Notes: a model not told the origin generated them from the letters alone. Counted from the first letter of the stretch, positions 12,975 through 43,870 are shown. The stretch is 64,000 nucleotides of DNA from Rhodosorus marinus CCMP1338 (GCA_029953675.1 JAMWBK010000009.1:434001-498000); one strand, 5' to 3'. Made by a program: numbers and translations.

Positions 12975-14370
12975 TCCAGTCATCATCTTCTTCAGCTTGT
13001 TCTCCGTACAACCGGCAGAAGAGAAGCATCGACGCTCGTCTAGGATGGTTTTGAGACGCAGGGCAAGCTTCTCTTGACCTAAACTCAAGTAGCAAGTCGA
13101 AAACTGGGAAGACTGTTGAAGAAGACAAGAGTGGATCGCACTCTTTCATAAACCCAGCACTCCGGTTTGCCACGCCACCTTCTTCAGCTTGATCTCTGTA
13201 CAAGCGGCTGAAGAGAAGCATCGACGCTCGTCTAGGATGGTTTTGAGACGCAGGGCAAGCTTCTCTTGACCTAAACTCAAGTAGCAAGTCGAGAATGAGG
13301 AAGACTGTTGAAGAAGACAAGAGTGGATCGCGCTCTTTCAGCATCCCAGCACTCCGGTTTGCCACCTTCTTCAGCTTGTTCTCTGTACAAGCGGCTGAAG
13401 AGAAGCATGGACGCTCGTCTAGGATGGTTTTGAGACGCAAGGCAAGCTTCTCACGACCCAAACTCAAGTAGCAAGTCGAGAATGAGTACTGTTGAAGAAG
13501 TCATAGTGGATCGTTTCTCTTTCAGCGTACCAGCACTCCAGTCATCCATCTTCTTCAGTTGAATCTGGACGCCCATGTAGGATGGTAATGAGACGCAAGG
13601 CAAGATTTTCGTGACCCAAACTCTAGTAGAAAGTCGTCAATGAGGAAGACTGTTCAAGGAGGGAGTGTACGTCTTCCTCTTAAGCGTCCCAGCGCTACAG
13701 TCATCCATCTTCCAGCTTTCTCTATTCAAGCGGCTTAAGAGAAGCATGGATGCTCACGTAGAGGATGGTAAAGTTTACTGACCAAGATTCAGAGAAGTCG
13801 CTTTAAGAAGACGGGGTGGATCTGTTCTCTTCGAACATCTCATCACTCATCTTCTTCTGCTCGTTTGCATCATACAAATGCGAAAGACGAGCACGGAAGA
13901 ACTAGCTGTTAAGTTTGTTGGGATGATGGTCTTGTGATACTACAGTTTTTCCTGACCAAGCTTCAGTCATCGCTTGAAGAAGAAGACAGGGTGGATCTGT
14001 TCTCTTCGAACATCCCATCACTCATCTTCTTCAGCTTGTTCGCGACATACAAATGCCAACGAGGCACACGGAAAATCTAGCTGTGAAATTTTGCTAGGGC
14101 TGGGCTTGAGATACTAGAACGAAGTATTTCCTGACCAAACTTCAGTTATCGCTTTGAAGACGATGACGGGGTAGGATCTCTTCTCTTCGAACATCCCATG
14201 GCTGGTCTTCTTCAGCTCGTTCGCAACATACAAATGCCAAAGAGGAGCATGGAACATAAAGCTGTGAAGTTTGGCTAGGAATGGTCTGGAGACACTCAAG
14301 GAAAGCCTTGCTGACCCAACGCATCGAGGAAGAGGAAGTACCTTGGAAGAAGAAGACAGAAAGGGATCGT
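12975..14370. repeat. Degenerate tandem array, about 8 units of 145-192 bp
   Basis: Anchor TCTTCAGC or a variant at 12989, 13181, 13368, 13552, about 13708, 13853, 14028 and 14209. Confidence 0.9.
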
Positions 14371-16033: not shown

Positions 16034-17788
16034 CTATACATTGAAAGTGTTCATGATAAATTTGAAGAGAGCACGCATGCCCTGAGCTTCTCCACCTTCA
16101 GGTCGACCAGGTTTTGAGGACGGGTTGAATCCCATATGGTCGATGTGTATCCACCTGGTAGGTTTCGACACGAACTCCTTCAGGTACAGCGCTGCAGTTA
16201 TCGCGCCCGCGAACCTAATCGTCGAAACAGATTGTAGAAAACGCAAGCGTTAATGTTGTGAATCAGTGTGAACTAGCGGTGCACATCTCTCTTCATTGTG
16301 TATCTCCGTTCGGCCTTACCCTCCAGTAGAACAGTTCTTCATGTCGGCAATCGATGAGTCCAGCATTTTTCTGTAAGGAGCATGAAGCGGTAACTGCCAG
16401 ACCAGATCGTTTTCACCCCTGCTCTGATCCTGGAGCACGCGACCATCTTCCTCATTGGAACAGAACGAGCCTGGAATTTCAACACCCAGCGCCACCCTAA
16501 TCAGCGTGCGTCGAATGAATCAGTGGACTTAACGCAAACTACTTGGAAGAACGATTTTTTTTGACAAATCTTTTTTAGACGCTTACCGCTGGGCTCCAGT
16601 AAGCGTCGCAAAGTCTATGAGCAGATCCGGTTTCTCCTCGCATGCATAATGAAGGGCATCTGCCAGTATCAACCGGCCTTCTGCATCGGTGTTCTCTATT
16701 TCAGTAGTGATACCTTTGCGAGACTGAAGAACGTCCCCGGGGCGATAGGCTTCACCAGAGATGGAATTTTCAACGGCTGGGATTAGGAGTCGAACCCTTA
16801 ATGGTGGGTTAGTCTCCATGATCATTCCTGCTAACCCCATCGCCGTTGCAGCGCCTCCCATGTCCTTTTTCATGTTCCTCATACCGGCAGGTGGTTTGAT
16901 GTCCAAACCTCCTGTGTCATAGCATACTCCCTTTCCAACAACTGTCACCAGCGGAAGCTCCGTTCGCTCTGAGTTGTACCTCAAATCGATGAGCCTTGGT
17001 TCGCATCCAGCTGATCTCGCAGCGCGTCCGACCGCATGGATCATCGGAAATTTCGTTTCCAACAGAGCATCTCCAACGATGCTCTCTGTTCGAGCTGCAT
17101 ACCTTTCGCCGAGGGCCCTTATCGCATTTTCCAGTTGCGAAGGAGTCATGTCCTCGGCAGGGTGGTTGATCAAGTCGCGCGCGAGATACGTAGAGCGAAT
17201 CGCCGCGGCCGTCCTGTCCTTTGGCCAGAACTTCAGAGTCGGAGGTTTAGTATTCTTCTTGGTGCTCTTGTTCTGGCTTTTGTATTTTTTGAACTCGTAT
17301 CCTCCAAGTGCCCAGCCCAGGGACAACGCGTCTTCGTCAAAATTGCCGGTTACCTCGTAGCAAGCGTTGGGTGGAAGCTTTTTGGGCAGATCAGCGTACG
17401 TCCACGGCTCAGACTTTGCAGATCCTGTACTAAGGATGACCTCAGAGACTACCTTGCCGTCATCCACACCTTCTGAACCGCCCATGAATGGGACAACGGC
17501 AATTGATCCGGCCTTTTTACTGCTAAATCGATTCGCGCTCAACCACGCATCCATTCCAGCCGGCTGGGAACGAACCCAAGCATCATATTCGTCCGAAGAC
17601 AACGCCCGGATAGGTATTGTATCGCTACGGTCCTTCTCAAAGAGAGCAGTAAACCGGCTCATATTCTCAACGCAATCCTCTCCACACGATTCCACCGCCT
17701 TGGCAACGACGGTACATCTGCGCTTAGCCGTGGCTGCCTTCGCGGTTGTACGAAACAACCGCAGCGGGGAGACGAAAGCAGTATCCAT
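16034..17788 (-). CDS. M17 leucyl aminopeptidase, bacterial PepB type, plastid-targeted (3 exons)
   Basis: GKGVCYDTGGLDIKP, MKKDMGGAA, NTDAEGRLILADAL and DFATLTGA motifs; transit peptide MDTAFVSPLR. Introns 16586-16498 and 16319-16215. Confidence 0.93.
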
Positions 17789-19575
17789 AGTTCTTAAACC
17801 TTATAAACTGAAAGACAAAAACAACAACAACAAAAACAGAAACCTGGCAAAATCAGACCCCCTCCCCCTCAAAGAAAAGATCCCATCGATTCTCACCCAA
17901 CGGGTCTCTCCAGTCACCATTTCAATGCTTCCATACCTCACTTTGTCGACAGCTCTACAGTGAGAAAAGCTTCAGCTTTTCCTTCAGAGACACTCCAGAA
18001 AAACACAACCTTTTGATTACTTTTCCAGCTCTAAGTCAAGGACTTAAGACGTCACAGGATCCCAATCGCTCCGATGCATCCTTGACCAATCTTGCTTAGC
18101 ATTTCCATCTCATGAAATCTCGTATTCCCCAATCTCAGCGATTTACTCTTCAGGGTGATTTCTCATGGAAGCGCTGTTTTGGGGGGAACGGGGAGTTGGT
18201 TTTCGTTGACGATTCCATCAACGTGAACGCGACGGTGTTTATACTTTTGGCAAGTTGGGTATGGAAATTATAGAAACGCTGCTGATAAGCACTTGGAAAC
18301 CGACAATGTTTCAATACCGATGACCCGTAGACTTCAGTGGAGTTTCACGACGGAAATTGATGCGACCCGTGGTTTGGACGAAACTCGATGGGCACGTCGG
18401 CTAGCTATGTCAGACTAGGTATTGAAATTAGATAGATGCTGCTGAGGCGCATGTAAATGACATGGTTTAATCCTAATGGCCGCAGACCTCAGTGCTTCTC
18501 ACGAGCAAGCTCGTGAGGACCCTTTTTTCCCTACGGCGCAAGGCACCCAGAGAACATACCAGCTTCTCCGCGGCGAGAGAAGAGTGAGGTTGTGAATGCT
18601 GATATATTGCACATGCAAATTGGTGAAGGAACAGTTCATTGAAACGTAGTTATCATTACAGAAGGCCAAGCACATTCGAGTGAGATATCAGTCTTAAAAA
18701 AGGCTTGAGATAGTGGCGTCCCACCCCAGGTCATTGCAGTTCGAGGTGAAGACTTCTCCCCTTCGGGTTCGATGTGTATCACCATGAAGATAGGATCGTT
18801 TTAACCCGGTGGATATCATCAAGGATGTAGAAATTCTCCGACACAGTTCAATAAGGATGAACATCCCGAATGCCTTCAGCGATTCGTTTGGTTTGAGAGG
18901 CACTGGCGCTTTTGCTCCGCACGCCGGATCTTCAATGGCTTTTATCTGGAGCGGTTGGCGACTTCATATTGAAATGTTCCGAAGAACCACACGGAGAAAG
19001 ATCTATCATCTGGGCAGACTAAGTATCGACAAAAACGCTTGTGACTAGCCACCGTAACCTTCCGAACAGATGGACTCTTTGGTTTGGGTCGTGAATCCAT
19101 AGCGTACCGGCGTGTGGGCAAACCCAGGTACGTCTCCCTTCCTCAGGGCTGCAATCTTTCGTATTTCTGCGAAGAAGTCGATGTATGAACTCAGTTTGAC
19201 GGTGTTGGTTGCAACAGCAGAGACAAAGCATGCACTGGTAAGCGTCAACATGGTCTTATGGCGGGATTATTCCTGGAACTCGGTAATGAGCATGGACCAG
19301 GTCCTTACAGGAAGTCGATTTTATTTACCGATGACTGGGGCAAAAGAAGGTGTTCGCGTTGAATCTCTAGGGTAGACTTCGAAAGCTCCAAACATGGAAA
19401 GAAAGCGACCCCCGAGTTCCTCTCGCGACAACGTCAAAATCATGATCCAAGGCCTTATCCACCAAAAAACTACAAATGATCACAACCAGCAGAAAGGCCC
19501 CCGACAGAAAAAAGGGAATACGAACGCTCAAGGCAAGCAAGAATCGTAAAACTCGCACGAAGCCAAAAGCACAAA

Positions 19576-19752
19576 CTACTTCGCGATCGCCTTATCGAAG
19601 AACACAATTTCGCCCACCTTCTTCCCCGCCATTGTTCCAAGCCCGAACATAATTCCGGAGATCAGCGGAAAAAGGAACACATCCTTGAACTCCGAAAAGA
19701 TGACCTTGTAATCATATTTCTCATCCCCAGCCGTAGCATCAGCAGCCGTCAT
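19576..19752 (-). CDS. 58-aa single-TM protein with Mim1/Tom13-like motif
   Basis: MTAADATAGDEKYDYKVIFSEFKDVFLFPLISGIMFGLGTMAGKKVGEIVFFDKAIAK. It lies downstream of an AT-rich promoter island and a G/T-rich leader. CDS status is well supported; the family call is inferred. Confidence 0.65.
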   Translation of the reverse strand: MTAADATAGDEKYDYKVIFSEFKDVFLFPLISGIMFGLGTMAGKKVGEIVFFDKAIAK

Positions 19753-20654
19753 CCTAACTTGCACAAATTTCTCCTTAACAACAACCAACCCACAGAACCG
19801 TTCTAACAAACACGAAGAGGACGTTCGTTGCTCAACAATACAAGGAATACCTCCAACAGATCCAAAAACAAAGCCAAAAAAATAACCAAGAGTCCAGCAC
19901 TCCTCCTCCACCTCCAACAAATCTTCTACAAGCCCATCCAAAGTCTAAACCACCAGATCTTCCTCATCAATGACAAAAAGCTAAAAACGAAAACGCTTCT
20001 GATGATCACAAATCCATGATTCAATCAAAACAATACTCTTCAATCCAAATTATATTCTTCATCCAATGGAACATAAGTAAGAGTTTTTCTTCGCCAATAG
20101 AAGTGAGTTTCAAAATATAGCTTAGATGTATCTATATTTACTTAGATGTGAGAATATTACTTTCTAGATGTATTATTTTAGTTTTATTTGGAATTTTAGG
20201 ATTAATTTTAGAAGGATATATTTTGTATGAATGTAGTTTTAAAATATCAATCTTTATGGATGAGAAAAAGAATATTTAGTTTTGAGAAATGAAGTTTATG
20301 GTACTGATTTTGATTGTGGAAGTTTTCGGTTGGGGGTAGGGTTGCTGGGAGCATTTTGGAGAAGACAGCTACCGCGTGCATCGTTCCACACAGCTTTCAG
20401 ATGGCCGCCCTACCCCGCACCGAGAGCAGCTGTGCTGTACTTTATGTCTGTAACTGTCGAATCTTAAACGGACAGTCCCCAAAGTCCGAGTCTGGAATGG
20501 ATCCGAGGAACAGCCATGACCGCGAAAGCAAAGCTGACCTTCTTCCCGTTTCAGGTATAATTAGGATTGTCGTTTTACTTTATGTTGGGATCACCAAAAA
20601 GCTTCAATAGCGATGGATAACATTCTCCACTCACAAAACTAGAGAGATGTATGC

Positions 20655-21979
20655 CTACCAGAACATGCCCTTCTTCTTCTCACCCTTTTCAAATGCCTTC
20701 ACGCCGTTCTCTTCAAGCTTCTTAAAGGCGGCGCTGAAATCGGTGAACCATTTCTCCTCATCTTTGGCGTAGATTTCCACCCATTTGCGGAACTCCTTGT
20801 CCCAGATCATGGCCATGTCACTTGGCAACATCATGAGATCGCCTGTCGGGTCTTCGAACTGGAAAGGACCATCCCACTGCTTCACAGTCCATGCGTTCTC
20901 CAGCAGCTCCCTGTAGAATTCATTCGAGAAGGTCGTCGGAGCTCTCGTCCAAGGCCCATCGTATCTGCAGATCGTAGAGATAAAGTGTGCAGGACGATGT
21001 TTAAGACTTCAATATATTCGACAAGTTGTAATTCATGCTGCTCCAAGAAGACCTACCCACTCCTCGTGCTGTAGCAGCGTCCAAGCGCATGTGCACCAGA
21101 GAGGGCGACGATCTCCTGATCGTTGAATCCTTGCCTGTAGAATATGTCTCTGAGATGCTGAATGGTTGCTGGGACGGAGCCCTTATCCGCGTCTGGCAAT
21201 CTACCATCTGGCGTGGTAAACGATTCGTCCTTGTCGACACGTCCAGGCCTCCACGCAATCTTCAGCCGCGCCGGAGGAGGAAGAAGGAAATCTTTGTGGA
21301 GTAAGAACCTACAACGTTCACCTGTTCTTGTTTTGGACTGAGATAATGTGCGATATACTTACGCTAGGGCCACCCATGTACTCAATTGAATACGCCCCGG
21401 CGAGAGTCCATAGGTCACCGTATGTAATTTGTGGAAACTGCTTCTTGACCTCTTCAAGCTTGTCCCTGGCGATACCAAGGCCGGCGTTGGCTGCATGTCC
21501 AGCCTCTGCTTTGAACCTCATCGTTGCACCTGTAAAATGAACAAAGCAGATCGTTCATTGTCAGATAGCCTGTGACGAAACCCTCTCACAGATGTGGAAA
21601 GCAGGCGCCTACCGTCTGAGCCCCCGGTCTTGGAACTCACATCGTAAGTTCCGGATGCATGCCAGGCAAGGCGGACCAAAGTAGGGCCCATGTTGTCATC
21701 ATCGTCAAGAATCTTCTCAATGGCTTCCTTAACTTTCCCATAATCAACCGACGTATCCGCATACACAGGCGCCCCTCGACCGGACAGCGCCGAGACTCCC
21801 GCAGCTCCGAGAACCACAACACCAACCGTCTGAGCAAAAACCCGCGAGCTTCCGGTAAATCCCGCATGAGATGCAGACGTCGACATCCCACGAACTGACT
21901 GCCTTCCCGTCAACCCCAACCTCCCAGCATTCAAAACCGGATAGGATCTCCGTAACACAAACACAGATCGATTCATCAT
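20655..21979 (-). CDS. CCP1: Mitochondrial cytochrome c peroxidase (class I heme peroxidase), multi-exon
   Basis: Mitochondrial-type presequence plus TM segment; [40 protein letters not shown] and LMMLPSDMA motifs. Confidence 0.88.
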
Positions 21980-22184
21980 GTCCAAAACACCACAAAAAGA
22001 AAAACAAAACACCACAAAAAAAAAACCTACACTCTGTATCAAAACAACTCTATTCTAAACACAATCTGGAAACGATCTTATGGTCCAACAAATTACAGGT
22101 TAAGACCAGGATTCTTCTCCACCTTCCCCTTCCTTCCCTCCTCCCCCTCCTCCCCCCCACTCCCCCTTTCGCTTCGAGCTCGTA

Positions 22185-23140
22185 TCTCAACTGCCCCAAC
22201 ATCCAAATTTAACCTCCCGAGTCTCAGGCAGCATCTCATTGGAATCAATGCTCCGAACAGGAAAAATATCTCAACCGAAGCTCACTGGGAGGGACACCGA
22301 AGCGGAGGGTACGGAGGTTTATACACCAAACGAATTCTTGAGTTGGATGGCGAAAGCTCCACTTCTTATATTCTTCTCTCAACTGCCCCGAACACCCATT
22401 TTAACCTCCGATTTCCCGAATCAGAAATATTTGAACAGAAGCTCCCCCGGGGAGGGACACCGGAGAGGAAGGTACGGTGGTGTAGGAACCGAGTGAAATT
22501 TTGGATTGGATGGCGAAGAATCCAACTTCCCAAGTTTCTCTCTCAAGTGTCCCAAACACACATTGTTGTACAACCTCCGATTTTCAGTCGGGCATCTCAT
22601 TGGAATCAATGCTCCAGAAAAAAAAAATCAACCGAAGCTCACCGGGAGGGACAACGAAGCGGAGGGTACGGAGTGTATAGACCAAATATGAATTCTTGGG
22701 TTGGATGGCGAAAGCTCCACTTCTTATGTTCTTCTCTCGACTGCCCCGAGACCTATTGTAACCTCCTATTTCCTGAAACAGAAATATTTCAAGAGAAGCT
22801 CACCAAGGAGGGACACCGGCAGAGGAAGGTACGGCGGTGGAGGGACCGAGTGAAATGTTAGATTTGATGGCGAATGCTCCAACTTCCCAACATTCTCTCT
22901 CAAGTGTCCCAAACACACATTACAACCTCCGATTTTCAGTCGGCATCGCATTGGAATCAATGCTCCGAACAGAAAAAATATCTCAACCGAAGCTTTCAGG
23001 GAGGGGGGAAGGGGAGGGTCCGATGGTGTCTGGACCGAGTGAATTTGATCCAAGTTCCTCTCTCAATTGCCCCAAAAACCCGTCGGATTTTCGATTAGAA
23101 TCGAATGTCAATGCTCCGAAACAGAAAATATATCTCAACG
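22185..23140. repeat. Higher-order tandem repeat: alternating ~192/~164-bp monomers, ~357-bp dimer
   Basis: TCTC(A/G)A(C/G/T)TG(C/T)CCC anchor at 22185, 22377, 22541, 22735, 22898 and 23061. Confidence 0.92.
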
Positions 23141-39843: not shown

Positions 39844-41222
39844 CTACCAGTCCAATCGATCGGATTCGTCTGAATACTGAGCGGCAATCCCGCTCTTGCC
39901 CTTCCTAGCCTTTGTGGGAGCATCCTCCGGGGTTCGATACTCCATTCCAACGTAAGATCGCCTTTGTAGCTCTGCGGCTGCTGATCCCTGTCCTCGAACA
40001 TCTTGCACGCTCCAGTCCCCTCTGTTCGAAACATCAGTCGACGTGGTTCCTTCCCGGCTTTCCTCAGCTTCATCTTCGAGCTAAAGAATATATAGGCAGA
40101 AGCAGTTATAGTTAGTCTCTGAATTACTCAGCGACACTGCCGTTAGTAATTCATTCGCATTCGTACCTTCAGGTTTTCAGAAAACGCCAAGTTGAAATCT
40201 GCAGAGTACTGCAGCGGATCCAAATGGTCGTCGTCTGTAAGCGCCACGATCAACTCCATTGGGGTTATGACGGCCCGGTCAAAGCCCTTCGGGGAGAGGA
40301 GCGAGTTCTCCGGGCACGCGATGACTATGAATACCTCGATCTCTGGAAAGTTTCGCAGCTTCTCAAGCGTGGGCTTTCCCACGCAAATAGTGTACGACCT
40401 CCGCTCCGCCTTTTCTATGACCTTCTGACACCTGGCTATGGCTTGGCTCTGGCCGCTAACGGACAGGGTGCCTGCAACTATCCCATAACGATGCGCATGC
40501 CTGGCCTTCTCGACCACCGCGAAGCGCTGGGTGATAACCCTTCCCACGGCAACGGAGTGGTCTGCATCCGGCGCCTCCGGATCGAAAACATGTACCAAAT
40601 GCGCACTAAGACTCACCGCAACGCTCCGTAGGGTGCGTGAGTCTGCTGATCCCACCCAGATGAATGCCAATCGACCTTCCTTAGGCGCGGACGCAGTCTC
40701 CGGGATGACGTAACGACCAAATTTCCCAAACCCCAAAGATTCGTGATGCTTGACGATCTTATTCAATTCTACAGATGGACTAGCGACCACCGCTGCAGTG
40801 AAATCTCTCACTTGACCGAAGTATCGCAGCTCCGGAACAACGACAACCACTGCTTGAGGCTCGGAATCTCGGATTTTCGAAACAAGACCCTCGAGAAGCG
40901 AGTAGTCCACTTTCTCAATACTTTTCTCAGGGACATACATGACAGGCAAAGTCCTTGTTGGAGACAGGCACGCGTGACCAAAGTGAACAACAAGATCACA
41001 ACTCACATGCTCTGCCGCTACCTCGTCAACGCAGCAGTCCCCGTACGACGTATCGGCAAGAACAAACAGTTCCACGTCGTCTCCAATTCTCCTCTTCAGC
41101 GCACTCTGTACATCCCAAACAGACGGCAAAAGTCCATCCGGAAACTGAAGCGCTACGCGCTTTGCTCCGAAAGAAGAAATCTCCGAAGAAATTCTTCCCG
41201 CAACCAGATCGTCATCTTCCAT
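39844..41222 (-). CDS. DPH2: Diphthamide biosynthesis protein 2
   Basis: ALQFPDGLL, LADTSYGDCCVDEVAAEH, VVHFGHACLS, KLRNFPEIEVF..IACPE and C-terminal RSYVGMEY...GKSGIAAQY.DE, which is typical of Dph2. Confidence 0.88.
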
Positions 41223-41479
41223 GATTAACACCGCCTCATCAACGAGCCAACGCTCGGGATGCTCACAATACCCTTGGCATCAGCATACTCATCCAGAGGC
41301 TCCGCCAGAGGAATATGCCGGCACTCTGCTCATCGCCATAGATAGCTCCGAAAGAAATCTTAAGTCAGCCCATTCCCTGACAGTTCGTCGGCGTCTCGAG
41401 AGTGCAAACTTTGTTCACCAGTTCTCAGTCCTCAGCACACCACTGAGCGGATTGCTCGAGCTGGGGGATGTCTCACGGG

Positions 41480-41990
41480 AGTATTGACTTCATCATAAAA
41501 TAAACATGGATATGTATTTGTAGACGATTCTCACTAACCAGTTAGCCTCTCCCAAAAAAAATGTAGACAAAAGCCTAGTGAAAACCCACCCCCCTCACCA
41601 CCATCACATCCGAAATTGACTAAATAAACTCGAATAAAAAATACAATAAGAGCACATCAATCTTTAACCCCGGCCTGGCGCACGGTGACGCTTTCGTCTA
41701 TTTCTCTAATTTCATGAAAGTGTCACCTCCAAGAAACCTCATTTTTGGTTTGTTCCGAAAACTATACATCATATTAATGAATAAAAATATTTATCAATCT
41801 ATTATATTGACTGAATAAAACGACTCTTAACCCCTCATGATCTGCACATCCCGTTACCCATATCTAAGCGTCAATACGAATTATTAGAATTAAATTTATG
41901 ACTTAGATTGAGTAGGCAATAATATTAATTTATTTGAATAGAAGTATTGTTTTTGATTGATATTTGTTGACTCTTAAGGACTCAATTTGC
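41480..41990. promoter_or_regulatory. AT-rich bidirectional promoter region (DPH2 / SPPL)
   Basis: AT-rich island between divergent start codons at 41222 and 42102. Confidence 0.6.
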
Positions 41991-42101
41991 AATTCGGTAT
42001 TGGGGTACAATGTGTCTGGAAGCTGCTGGGAGGGAAGGGGGAGAACAGAGGGAAGATGGGGGTTTGGATGGATCCTTGAGGTAGCGTTTAGGAGATTAAA
42101 G

Positions 42102-43870
42102 ATGGGTAGAATAGACTACAGAGTAATCTGTATCACAATATGGATCAATATGATTGTATTTGGAGGAGCGGAACCCGTTGTTGTGGTTTTGAAAGGCGGA
42201 GAGGAGGTGTGTGGGCTGTACAATCCCATGTTTAGTGCTCTGCCTGCAAGGAGCGGAAGGGTTCGAGCGTCTCAGTACGTTAAGATGACTATTTCAGAGC
42301 CATTGAATGCTTGTGAGAAGCTGGTTGGTGATGGGTTTTCGGGGAGTGCTGTTCTGGTCGAGCGAGGAGAATGCTCGTTTGCGGAAAAGGCGCAACATGT
42401 TGAACGGGCAGGAGGAAGCCTGGTGGTGGTAGAGAACACGGAGGATTCCTTTATCACACCTGTCGCGAATGCGAGCTTGGGAGAGTACGACGAGGTCAAT
42501 ATTCCGGTGGTCGTCGTGAATCACGCTGGCGGGTTGGCATTACGCGCCAGGGACGATGTTCAACTGAAGGCGTACGAAATCGTTGAACCAGCGTGGTTGA
42601 CTGTAGGGGAGGAGTTTGCGTCTGTAGTCGCAGGGTTGATCGGTGTATTCGTTGTTGTTTGCGGATCAATTTTGGCCACCAAACCCAACAAACGGGTAAG
42701 CAACCTCCCCCTCTCCCCCCCCCTCTTCTTCTCATACAACCTCATGCCCAGGTGCGCTTATACACTCAATAAATTCTGCTCTTTGCTTTTCAGGGCCCCT
42801 CCAGGCCTTCTTCAAGCGTCGAGAAAGGGGGAAATCCTGAGAAAGGAAATGCTGGGGCGATTGTTATCCTTGACCGACCAATCACAATTTTCTTGGTCAT
42901 GAGCGTGCAGTTGGTGCTCCTCTACCTCCTGTACGACTACGTTGTACGTATTGTTATTATCTGTTTTGCGATTGGTGCAGGGGGTTCCCTCTTTTTTATT
43001 CTGAGGCAGTTCACGAAGCCTGAGGACCCCGACGTACTGGTGATCCCCCGTTTGGGACTTCAGGCAACAGCAGCTGAAATCGTCCTCACGGCCTTGGCAA
43101 CAACACTCCCCGTTCTCTGGTACAGTTTCCGGCATTCATCGTGGTCGTGGATCCTTCAGAATATTCTCGGCATTTTCCTTATGTTGTTTGTGATGCAAAC
43201 GCTCAAACTACCGTCGATCAAGGTGGGAGTAATCCTGCTTTCTTGTTTATTCCTGTACGATATATTTTTTGTATTCGTCACTCCGCTCTTCACCTCAACC
43301 GGAGAATCCGTGATGGAGCGAGTCGCCAAAGGAGGTCCCACCTCCAGTGAACACATGCCCATGATGATTGTCGTCCCTTACCTGTTCAGCCCTCCCAGTG
43401 TAAGTTTCTCGGCACTCTTTCGATCCGTGAGGAGAAAGTACTTGACCTGAATACGTGCTAACTGAGGCTGTGATTTGTTCTGTCTAAAACAGGCCTGCCT
43501 GGGAGGAAGAGGCGCTTCGATGATCGGGTACGGTGACGTTATCGTGCCCGGTTTGTTCATAGTCCGACTACGTGCTTTTGAATTGAAGGCCGCGAGGGGA
43601 CGCAATGGTCAAGAGGCTCCTTCCTACTTCAAAGGCGCGGTTATTGGGTATGGAATTGGGCTTGTGCTTACGATACTGGCGTTGCGGTTGATGGATACAG
43701 CGCAACCCGCGCTATTATGGATTGTCCCGTCCATTGTCGTTTCCGCGGTGGTTGTGGCCGCTCGGAGAGGAGAGCTTGCGATGATTTGGGCGGAGAACAC
43801 GGACAATCCGGCTCCGACTGCTGTGGATGCAGAGGAGGCTACACCTGCACTGGTCAGCGGCGACGGCTAG
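42102..43870 (+). CDS. Signal peptide peptidase-like protease with PA domain (SPPL2-like), multi-exon
   Basis: Signal peptide, PA domain (LVERGECSFAEKA), catalytic LYDIFFVF and GYGDVIVPG, and QPALLWIVP. Confidence 0.93.

What the first reader, a model, noticed from the sequence alone, without database searches (positions are those of the whole stretch)
19576..19752. Mim1/Tom13-like micro-protein outside fungi
Seen: a 58-aa ORF with a slightly acidic N-terminus, one TM segment LFPLISGIMFGLGTMAGK and a basic flank, in a proper promoter context. Established: yeast Mim1 has LLPFLNGMMLGFGELFAH (P-x3-G-x-M-x-G-x-G), and the MIM insertase is regarded as fungal-specific, with unrelated analogues in trypanosomes (pATOM36) and animals (MTCH2). 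The insertase of the archaeplastid outer membrane is not clearly identified. Inference: a remote Mim1 homologue or convergent GxxxG-type insertase subunit. It is small enough to be missed by annotation.
Basis: partly seen in the sequence, partly recalled or inferred. Interest (0 to 1): 0.7.

Follow-up and report, generated by a model that had tools for sequence, protein, structure and literature searches.

The report
Conserved red-algal tail-anchored glycine-zipper microprotein
The 58-codon reading frame is a real gene for a tiny membrane protein conserved across red algae; its membrane helix carries the same proline/glycine pattern as the fungal mitochondrial insertase Mim1, but kinship with Mim1 and its function are not shown.

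Summary
The ORF exists as described: window 19576-19752, minus strand, 58 aa.

**It is a real gene.**
- Against a related species, 9 of 11 changed codons are synonymous, and conservation starts at the ATG.
- It is the only frame that stays open.
- An orthologue is present in the Bangiopsis transcriptome.

**It belongs to an uncharacterised family.** I collected about 20 members. Every named one is a red alga (Galdieria, Cyanidiococcus, Pyropia, Bangiopsis) and is annotated "hypothetical". There is no Pfam family, solved structure or paper.

**Only one part is conserved:** a helix with P-x3-G-x3-G-x-G-x3-G, then KR/KK and a 12-27 aa basic tail. This is tail-anchored architecture. The N-terminus varies in length and is mostly acidic.

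**The Mim1 resemblance is real but narrow.**
- The match is ungapped. P, G, M, G and G are invariant in both families. hhalign gives 63% probability, above 350 of 350 shuffles.
- It fails Pfam TOM13 (at most 14 bits; cut-off 25).
- DUF5665 and DUF4235 match as well or better.
- Without the five scaffold columns the match is not significant (p about 0.07).
- Mim1's invariant polar residues N, E and H-E are absent.

**Verdict:** a new red-algal tail-anchored glycine-zipper microprotein. It is a testable candidate for a Mim1-like role, because red algae have no annotated member of any known outer-membrane insertase family. Homology and function remain unproven.

The parts
19576..19752 (-). Complete coding sequence of the 58-aa microprotein. 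ATG at 19752-19750, TAG at 19578-19576, no intron.
   Evidence: Sequence and ORF list. Against L002: 9 synonymous and 2 non-synonymous changed codons, and conservation starts at the ATG. It is the only frame that stays open. The Bangiopsis transcript orthologue is also 58 aa and starts the same way, MTAAE.
19681..19752 (-). Residues 1-24: the variable, acidic N-terminal segment (net charge -3), predicted to face the cytosol.
   Evidence: Across the family this part is 16-168 aa long, mostly net negative and not alignable. Both amino-acid changes against L002 fall here, at residues 5 and 7. AF2 pLDDT is below 50 for residues 1-3 and 5-9.
19624..19680 (-). Residues 25-43 (VFLFPLISGIMFGLGTMAG): the transmembrane helix with the glycine zipper. 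P29, G33, G37, G39 and G43 are invariant.
   Evidence: Invariant columns in the 20-sequence alignment. The small residues cluster on one helical face (moment 0.41). AF2 predicts one helix over residues 15-57, with pLDDT 88-91 in this part. Kyte-Doolittle mean is 1.78. The single motif hit in the window lies at 19624-19668.
19579..19623 (-). Residues 44-58 (KKVGEIVFFDKAIAK): a short basic C-terminal tail, net charge +2, with a conserved E48.
   Evidence: The tail is 12-27 aa long in 20 of 20 members. Its net charge is 0 to +5, mean +2.15. [KR][KR]-x-[GA]-E followed by aromatic residues is conserved.

Best explanation
**Shown**
- This is a genuine protein-coding gene under purifying selection.
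- It belongs to an uncharacterised family whose named members are all red algae.
- The only conserved part is a single helix with an invariant P-x3-G-x3-G-x-G-x3-G pattern, followed by two basic residues and a tail of at most 27 residues.

**Inferred from this anatomy and from established knowledge of tail-anchored proteins and small-xxx-small motifs**
- The protein is tail-anchored. The TM helix leaves the ribosome only after termination, so it is inserted post-translationally, with the acidic N-terminus in the cytosol.
- The small-residue face (P29, S/T32, G33, G37, G39, G43, G/A47) packs against other helices. The protein therefore works as a homo- or hetero-oligomeric membrane subunit, and the function lies in the TM helix itself.

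**More speculative**
- Moderate TM hydrophobicity and a +1 to +3 tail favour an organelle outer membrane, most likely the mitochondrial one, over the ER.
- There it would act like Mim1: an oligomeric helper for inserting or assembling helical outer-membrane proteins. It could be a convergent analogue or a very remote relative.
- I put the Mim1-like function at about 0.25. The confidence given below is for the tail-anchored, oligomerising glycine-zipper subunit reading.
For: **Real gene:** 9 synonymous against 2 non-synonymous changed codons; flanks 58% and 74% identical against 94% in the ORF; it is the only open frame; there are transcriptome-derived orthologues.

**Family:** 18 cluster representatives at E<=1e-3 among 1.84 billion proteins. 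They include Galdieria sulphuraria Gasu_30680. Cyanidiococcus CCYA09G2575 and Pyropia yezoensis I4F81_004094 sit in the 90% clusters of two others. Bangiopsis is also a member.

**Conserved core:** P29, G33, G37, G39 and G43 are invariant; V25, L30 and E48 nearly so.

**Tail anchor:** the C-tail is 12-27 aa in 20 of 20 members, mean tail charge is +2.15 and mean TM hydropathy is 1.80. For comparison, mammalian mitochondrial tail-anchored proteins have tail charge about 1.1, shared mitochondrial/peroxisomal ones 2.5, ER ones 0.2 and peroxisomal ones 6.0. Yeast ER tail-anchored proteins have GRAVY above 1.75 (PMC5450235).

**Structure:** a single long helix, with pLDDT 88-91 in the core. The small residues lie on one face.

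**Mim1 parallel:** an in-register motif match above all shuffles. In Mim1, GxxxG motifs drive oligomerisation (PMC13254594; PMC6010339).

**Vacant role:** Rhodophyta have 0 annotated members of all four known outer-membrane insertase families.
Against: - There are no localisation, topology or interaction data of any kind.
- TM hydropathy (1.4-2.2) straddles the yeast ER/mitochondria boundary. Algae also have a plastid outer envelope that takes similar tail-anchored proteins.
- The Mim1 similarity rests almost wholly on five scaffold residues. It is below Pfam thresholds and is matched or beaten by DUF5665 and DUF4235.
- Mim1's invariant polar residues are missing.
- Mim1's C-terminal domain is about 40-57 aa in the full-length sequences, so Mim1 is not tail-anchored in the strict sense.
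- No Mim2-like partner was sought.
Confidence: 0.55

Rival explanations
1. It is a true, very diverged homologue of fungal Mim1 (Pfam TOM13). It would work as the core subunit of a MIM-type insertase in the red-algal mitochondrial outer membrane. MIM would then not be fungus-specific.
For: - The alignment is ungapped over about 24 residues. P, G, M, G and G are invariant in both families, +14 is small in both, +18 is small in both, and +21 and +23 are aromatic in both.
- hhalign gives about 63% probability and E about 7e-5, with 0 of 350 shuffles reaching the real score.
- TOM13 is among the four Pfam families matched by the most members, and the hits fall on the same profile positions, 48-67.
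- The architecture is the same.
- Red algae lack the other insertase families.
Against: - The best TOM13 score is 14.3 bits against a cut-off of 25, and the window protein itself gives no hit.
- The non-scaffold columns are not significantly similar (p 0.07).
- Invariant Mim1 residues N49, N56, E64, H68 and E69 are not conserved, and the juxtamembrane charge is reversed: H-E in Mim1, K/R-R/K here.
- The profile search of 1.84 billion proteins returned 18 proteins at E<=1e-3. The named ones are all red-algal, and none carries Mim1's invariant PF-x-NG-x-MLGFGE motif.
- DUF5665 scores higher and more often.
- The resemblance was noticed post hoc among many TM families.
Confidence: 0.17
2. It is a tail-anchored glycine-zipper protein of another membrane, with a function unrelated to outer-membrane protein insertion. 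The membrane could be the plastid outer envelope, ER or peroxisome. The function could be a small accessory subunit of a translocon or other complex, or a homo-oligomeric cation channel.
For: - The tail-anchor parameters do not separate mitochondria from the plastid envelope, and they overlap the ER range.
- The restriction to red algae fits a lineage-specific complex.
- From my own knowledge, glycine zippers are common in channel-forming and subunit-packing helices. Mim1 itself forms a cation-selective channel (PMC6010339).
- The motif also recurs in unrelated Pfam families.
Against: - Nothing positive points to a particular alternative complex.
- No member matches any solved structure or any Pfam or NCBIfam family at threshold.
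- The net-positive tail argues somewhat against the ER.
Confidence: 0.23
3. It descends from a bacterial small membrane-protein family (DUF5665 or DUF4235), for example through the plastid ancestor. It would work as those uncharacterised proteins do.
For: DUF5665 is the most frequent Pfam match: 10 of 20 members, best E 0.006. DUF4235 matches 5 of 20, best E 0.004.
Against: - All scores are at most 17.5 bits against cut-offs of 27.
- Two scans of 185,579 bacterial and archaeal species genomes found no relative.
- The 1.84-billion-protein profile search returned only 18 proteins, and all the named ones are red-algal.
- The N-termini are acidic, with no transit-peptide-like extension.
Confidence: 0.04
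4. It is not a gene: a chance ORF in conserved non-coding DNA.
For: Short ORFs are abundant here. The downstream non-coding DNA is also fairly conserved against L002, at 74%.
Against: - 9 synonymous against 2 non-synonymous changed codons, with a third-position bias of 9 of 11 differences.
- The frame is open only here.
- Protein-level homologues exist across four red-algal lineages with invariant residues.
- An orthologue is present in a transcriptome.
Confidence: 0.01

Closest known systems
Mim1 / Tom13 (Pfam PF08219, PANTHER PTHR28241), core subunit of the fungal MIM insertase of the mitochondrial outer membrane
   Same: - Both are small single-pass proteins.
- In both, the N-terminus is variable and acidic and only the TM region is conserved.
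- The TM motif P-x3-G-x-M-x-G-x-G-x3-[G/A] is in identical register, and the small residues lie on one helical face.
- In Mim1, GxxxG motifs are known to drive oligomerisation.
   Different: - This family is below the Pfam threshold.
- It lacks Mim1's invariant N49, N56, E64, H68 and E69.
- The juxtamembrane charge is basic (KR) instead of H-E.
- The C-terminal part is 12-27 aa, a true tail anchor, against about 40-57 aa in full-length Mim1.
- It is red-algal, not fungal.
- Localisation, a Mim2 partner and activity are unknown.
pATOM36 / At5g55610 and MTCH1/2: the non-fungal outer-membrane insertases
   Same: They would fill the same cellular role if the Mim1-like reading is right. According to the literature, all of them carry TM GxxxG motifs.
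   Different: Those are multi-span proteins of about 30-36 kDa with a hydrophilic groove, whereas this is a 6-kDa single helix. There is no sequence relation. Rhodophyta have 0 annotated members of those families.
DUF5665 (PF18910) and DUF4235 (PF14019), bacterial small membrane proteins of unknown function
   Same: They give the best, though sub-threshold, Pfam matches to the same glycine-rich helix.
   Different: Scores are 14-17.5 bits against cut-offs of 27. No prokaryotic relative was found by genome scans. Their function is unknown, so they add no mechanism.
Small tail-anchored TOM subunits (Tom5, Tom6, Tom7); comparison from my own knowledge
   Same: [quoted passage not shown]
   Different: No family of that name appears among the Pfam matches at E<=10. 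Those proteins lack the G-x3-G-x-G-x3-G zipper.

Membership tests
Mim1/Tom13 (Pfam PF08219) | Scores at or above the Pfam gathering threshold (25 bits) against the TOM13 model | tested here: not met
   The window protein gives no hit at E<=10. Two of 20 family members hit: E 0.053 (13.9 bits) and E 0.08 (13.4 bits). A cyanidiophyte-type consensus I composed reaches 14.3 bits. As a positive control, yeast Mim1 scores 88.6 bits.
Mim1/Tom13 (Pfam PF08219) | Profile-profile similarity to an alignment of fungal Mim1 sequences | tested here: inconclusive
   hhalign gives 62.6-63.8% probability, pairwise E about 7e-5 and score 33.1. This is above 0 of 200 and 0 of 150 column shuffles (maxima 21.7 and 26.1) and above the reversed controls at 17.5-17.7. 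However, 25 of about 29.5 column-score units come from five P/G columns, and the rest give p 0.07.
Mim1/Tom13 (Pfam PF08219) | Single TM helix with two GxxxG/A motifs in the pattern P-x3-G-x-M-x-G-x-G-x3-A | tested here: met
   P29, G33, M35 (17 of 20 members), G37, G39 and G43 align without gaps to Mim1 P53, G57, M59, G61, G63 and A67.
Mim1/Tom13 (Pfam PF08219) | Invariant polar and charged residues of the Mim1 core (N49, N56, E64, H68, E69 in yeast numbering) | tested here: not met
   The equivalent positions are V, S/T, F/T, K/R and R/K in the red-algal family.
Mim1/Tom13 (Pfam PF08219) | Mitochondrial outer-membrane location, N-terminus in the cytosol and C-terminus in the intermembrane space | not testable with these tools
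   Only indirect evidence is available: an acidic N-terminus, moderate TM hydropathy and a +1 to +3 tail are compatible.
Mim1/Tom13 (Pfam PF08219) | Works with a Mim2 partner, and is needed for inserting or assembling helical outer-membrane proteins (Tom20, Tom70, multispan proteins) | not tested
This needs a genome-wide search and experiments.
Tail-anchored membrane proteins | One TM helix within about 30 residues of the C-terminus, and no N-terminal signal or presequence | tested here: met
   The C-tail is 12-27 aa in 20 of 20 members. The N-termini are variable and mostly net negative. Exactly one hydrophobic stretch is present. AF2 predicts a single helix over residues 15-57.
Glycine-zipper / small-xxx-small TM packing motifs | Gly or other small residues at i, i+4 (and i+8) spacing, forming one helical face, and conserved | tested here: met
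   G33/G37 and G39/G43 are invariant. P29, S/T32 and G/A47 lie on the same 280-80 degree arc. The small-residue moment is 0.41, against 0.47 for Mim1, and points in a similar direction: 336 against 360 degrees.
DUF5665 (PF18910) / DUF4235 (PF14019) | Scores at or above the Pfam gathering threshold (27 bits) | tested here: not met
   The best scores are 17.0 bits for DUF5665 and 17.5 bits for DUF4235. No prokaryotic relative was found.

The most novel reading that the evidence does not exclude
[quoted passage not shown] If it is homologous, MIM predates fungi and was lost repeatedly. If it is convergent, the same P/G-zipper helix was invented twice, and the vacant insertase role in Rhodophyta would be filled.
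Probability: 0.2. Interest if true: 0.85.

Novelty: new variant of a known kind. Interest (0 to 1): 0.5.

Why it matters
**An open question in red algae.** How helical proteins enter the mitochondrial outer membrane is known for three groups: fungi (Mim1/2), holozoans (MTCH1/2), and trypanosomes plus green plants (pATOM36/At5g55610). A 2026 survey lists no member of any of these families in red algae.

**A concrete candidate.** This is a red-algal tail-anchored microprotein, found in four named lineages. Its only conserved part copies the oligomerisation scaffold of Mim1. It can be tested cheaply by localisation in a transformable red alga and by yeast mim1/mim2 complementation.

**Value if it is not an insertase.** It would still be an unannotated, widely conserved microprotein family in which the TM helix itself is the functional unit. 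Genes this small can be missed by annotation: exact look-ups of this product, and of one other protein of the window, found nothing on record, so the annotation status of this genome is unknown.

Tried and rejected
1. **The longer 121-aa ORF (TTG at 19941) and the 96-aa gene call in L002.** Rejected. The upstream extension is not conserved and contains no ATG.
2. **Sigma-70 promoter and terminator scan.** No more sites than in shuffled sequence, and not meaningful in a eukaryote.
3. **Family profile against all PDB chain sequences.** Only a chance match at E 0.35 to AH receptor-interacting protein, in the pre-TM segment.
4. **NCBIfam scan.** Nothing consistent.
5. **Rfam, tRNA and tandem-repeat scans.** Nothing at the locus.
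6. **Two scans of metagenome contigs and two of prokaryotic genomes.** One extra eukaryote-like locus (L006) and no prokaryotic relative.
8. **tblastn of yeast Mim1 against the window.**
   - It gave a 17-aa match (E 0.4) at 19123-19173 on the minus strand, about 400 nt downstream of the ORF.
   - The match is to a Mim1 C-terminal stretch conserved only in Saccharomyces relatives.
   - Rejected as chance. E is about 0.4, that frame is interrupted by stops, and all family members end 12-27 aa after the helix.
9. **Literature search for the named homologues and for DUF5665.** No papers.
10. **Structure search.** Not run. A single-helix model would give meaningless matches.

Full report
**1. The observation**

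The minus strand of window 19576-19752 encodes MTAADATAGDEKYDYKVIFSEFKDVFLFPLISGIMFGLGTMAGKKVGEIVFFDKAIAK followed by TAG.
- The ATG at 19752 is the first in-frame ATG and has A at -3.
- The mechanical ORF list extends the frame to a TTG at 19941 (121 aa). That extension has no ATG and is not conserved.
- The N-terminal 24 residues have net charge -3. One hydrophobic stretch (V25-G43) follows, then KK and a 15-residue tail of net charge +2.

The description is therefore correct. 'Proper promoter context' cannot be checked. The window is eukaryotic, with split genes such as a class I peroxidase in at least four exons at 20655-22042 on the same strand. The sigma-70 scan gave no more sites than in shuffled sequence.

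**2. Is it a gene?**

An ORF of 58 codons is not evidence by itself: there are 68 ORFs of at least 30 aa in the surrounding 5.5 kb. The evidence comes from comparison.
- A Logan contig from a related species (L002, SRR32518360) aligns to 18835-19775 at 77.6% identity.
- Inside the ORF only 11 of 177 nt differ. Nine differences are at third codon positions. Nine changed codons are synonymous and two are not, both in the N-terminal segment.
- The 177 nt upstream are 58% identical and the 177 nt downstream 74%.
- Similarity collapses immediately 5' of the ATG.
- In a six-frame comparison, only this frame stays open at 97% identity. Every other conserved piece is interrupted by stops.
- The Bangiopsis sp. 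CCMP1999 transcriptome (MMETSP1475) holds a 58-aa orthologue that starts MTAAE.

The gene is real and is translated as a stand-alone microprotein.

**3. The family**

A first search gave four relatives, and a profile search gave a fifth. A profile search over 1.84 billion cluster representatives then gave 18 proteins at E<=1e-3. Every named member is a red alga:
- Galdieria sulphuraria Gasu_30680;
- Cyanidiococcus yangmingshanensis CCYA09G2575;
- Pyropia (Neopyropia) yezoensis I4F81_004094;
- Bangiopsis.

Other points:
- All but one source name is 'hypothetical' or 'uncharacterised'. The exception is a 64-aa Cyanidiococcus-cluster member that one source labels 'lipid-binding SYLF domain-containing protein'.
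- The remaining members come from unnamed assemblies.
- No prokaryotic relative was found in 185,579 species genomes. No paper mentions the named members.
- The window is thus probably from a red alga. Its closest named relative for this protein is Bangiopsis, at 67% identity.
- In the 20-sequence alignment P29, G33, G37, G39 and G43 are invariant, and V25, L30 and E48 nearly so.
- The N-terminal part ranges from 16 to 168 residues. It is Ala/Asp/Glu-rich and cannot be aligned. In Galdieria it is Cys-rich.
- Gene neighbours differ between loci.

**4. Anatomy and likely mechanism**

*Shown:*
- In all 20 members the helix ends 12-27 residues before the C-terminus. The tail has net charge 0 to +5 (mean +2.15). 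Helix hydropathy is 1.39-2.19 (mean 1.80).
- AlphaFold2 with the family alignment gives one helix over residues 15-57, with pLDDT 88-91 in the core.
- On a helical wheel, the invariant or small residues (P29, S/T32, G33, G37, G39, T/F40, G43, G/A47) occupy a 160-degree arc. The opposite face is aliphatic.

*Inferred:*
- From established knowledge, a TM helix this close to the C-terminus leaves the ribosome only after termination. These are therefore tail-anchored proteins, inserted post-translationally with the N-terminus in the cytosol.
- The conserved small-residue face is a glycine zipper for tight helix-helix packing. The protein therefore probably works as a homo- or hetero-oligomeric membrane subunit, with the function residing in the helix.
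- On targeting, mammalian tail-anchored proteins have mean tail charges of 1.1 (mitochondria), 2.5 (mitochondria plus peroxisomes), 6.0 (peroxisomes) and 0.2 (ER). Yeast ER tail-anchored proteins have GRAVY above 1.75 (PMC5450235).
- This family fits the mitochondrial class best, but it overlaps the others. The plastid outer envelope cannot be excluded in an alga.

**5. The Mim1 question**

I confirmed my recalled yeast Mim1 sequence against Pfam TOM13 (88.6 bits). I then collected 17 fungal relatives and aligned 12 of them.

*In favour:*
- hhalign of the red-algal profile against the Mim1 profile gives 62.6-63.8% probability and a pairwise E of about 7e-5.
- The score of 33.1 exceeds all 200 whole-alignment column shuffles (mean 11.7, maximum 21.7) and all 150 shuffles confined to the Mim1 TM core (mean 12.6, maximum 26.1). 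It also exceeds the reversed controls at about 17.6.
- Column by column, the register is exact and ungapped. P, G(+4), M(+6), G(+8) and G(+10) are invariant in both families. Position +14 is G here and A in Mim1, +18 is small in both, and +21 and +23 are aromatic in both.
- The architecture is alike: a variable acidic N-terminus, one conserved helix and a net-positive C-terminal side.

*Against:*
- The window protein has no TOM13 hit at E<=10.
- Only the two cyanidiophyte-type members hit TOM13 (E 0.053 and 0.08). A cyanidiophyte-type consensus I composed reaches 14.3 bits, against a cut-off of 25.
- DUF5665 (10 of 20 members, best E 0.006) and DUF4235 (5 of 20, best E 0.004) match the same helix as well or better.
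- If the five P/G scaffold columns are set aside, the other 23 aligned columns score 4.5, against -6.4 +/- 7.2 for permuted registers (p 0.07). The scaffold alone contributes 25.
- Mim1's invariant N49, N56, E64, H68 and E69 are not conserved, and the juxtamembrane charge is reversed.
- Mim1's C-terminal domain is about 40-57 aa in the full-length sequences, so Mim1 is not strictly tail-anchored.

*Conclusion:* the resemblance is real and specific to the oligomerisation scaffold. It is what convergence on a P/G zipper would also produce. Membership of the Mim1 family is not established. A Mim1-like way of working remains possible.

**6. Context from the literature**

- Mim1 and Mim2 have been found only in fungi (PMC6010339; PMC13254594).
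A 2026 preprint proposes At5g55610, a pATOM36 relative, as the outer-membrane insertase of green plants (PMC12934571).
- Table S5 of that preprint lists 0 sequences in Rhodophyta for MTCH, Mim1, pATOM36 and At5g55610. For red algae the role is still unassigned.

**7. Verdict**

This is a real, previously undescribed, red-algal family of tail-anchored glycine-zipper microproteins.

| Reading | My estimate |
|---|---|
| Real gene | about 0.99 |
| Tail-anchored, oligomerising membrane subunit | about 0.55-0.7 |
| Mitochondrial outer membrane with a Mim1-like role | about 0.2-0.25 |
| True homology to Mim1 | about 0.15-0.2 |

Novelty: a new variant of a known kind (single-helix GxxxG outer-membrane-type subunits). 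The interest is moderate. It comes from the fact that an open question, the red-algal outer-membrane insertase, gains a cheap and testable candidate. No step had to be referred.

Noticed in passing
window 20655-22042 (-): The gene directly upstream on the same strand is a class I haem peroxidase (APX/CCP type) split into at least four exons. Its first exon begins with a basic, Ser/Arg-rich extension ([23 protein letters not shown]...) that looks like an organelle presequence.
   Followed up: partly
window 22204-23030: An array of diverged direct repeats of about 357 bp (82-90% identity between copies) lies just upstream of the peroxidase gene. It produces repeated pseudo-peptides in the ORF list.
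   Followed up: partly
window 18835-19575: About 700 nt downstream of the microprotein gene is 74-80% identical to the related species' contig L002, but it has stops in every frame. It may be a conserved 3' UTR or other non-coding element, or may simply reflect close relatedness.
   Followed up: partly
window 19123-19173 (-): A 17-aa tblastn match (E 0.4) to the C-terminal RKIAAL stretch of yeast Mim1 lies about 400 nt downstream of the ORF on the same strand. I judged it chance: the frame is interrupted by stops, and the stretch is conserved only in Saccharomyces relatives.
   Followed up: yes
P0026 (Galdieria sulphuraria Gasu_30680), residues 16-40: The Galdieria member has a Cys-rich N-terminal segment (CPCLQGGVCSCEGSCAC) that gives a weak metallothionein match (E 0.0016, below the cut-off). 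Other members have Ala/Asp/Glu-rich N-termini.
   Followed up: no
window 12987-13558 and 13805-14296: Two tandem-repeat arrays: 192 bp x 3.0 copies at 90% matches, and 181 bp x 2.8 copies at 81% matches.
   Followed up: no
window 16583-17788 (-), 40143-41231 (-), 41964-42902 (+): Other recognisable genes in the window:
- an M17 leucyl aminopeptidase, whose catalytic domain is cut at about position 199 of 310, presumably by an intron;
- a diphthamide synthesis protein;
- a PA-domain protein.

The diphthamide protein is not on record by exact look-up.
   Followed up: partly
window 20020-20300: A markedly AT-rich stretch lies in the roughly 900-bp spacer between the peroxidase stop and the microprotein start. 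It could hold the upstream gene's 3' end and this gene's promoter.
   Followed up: no
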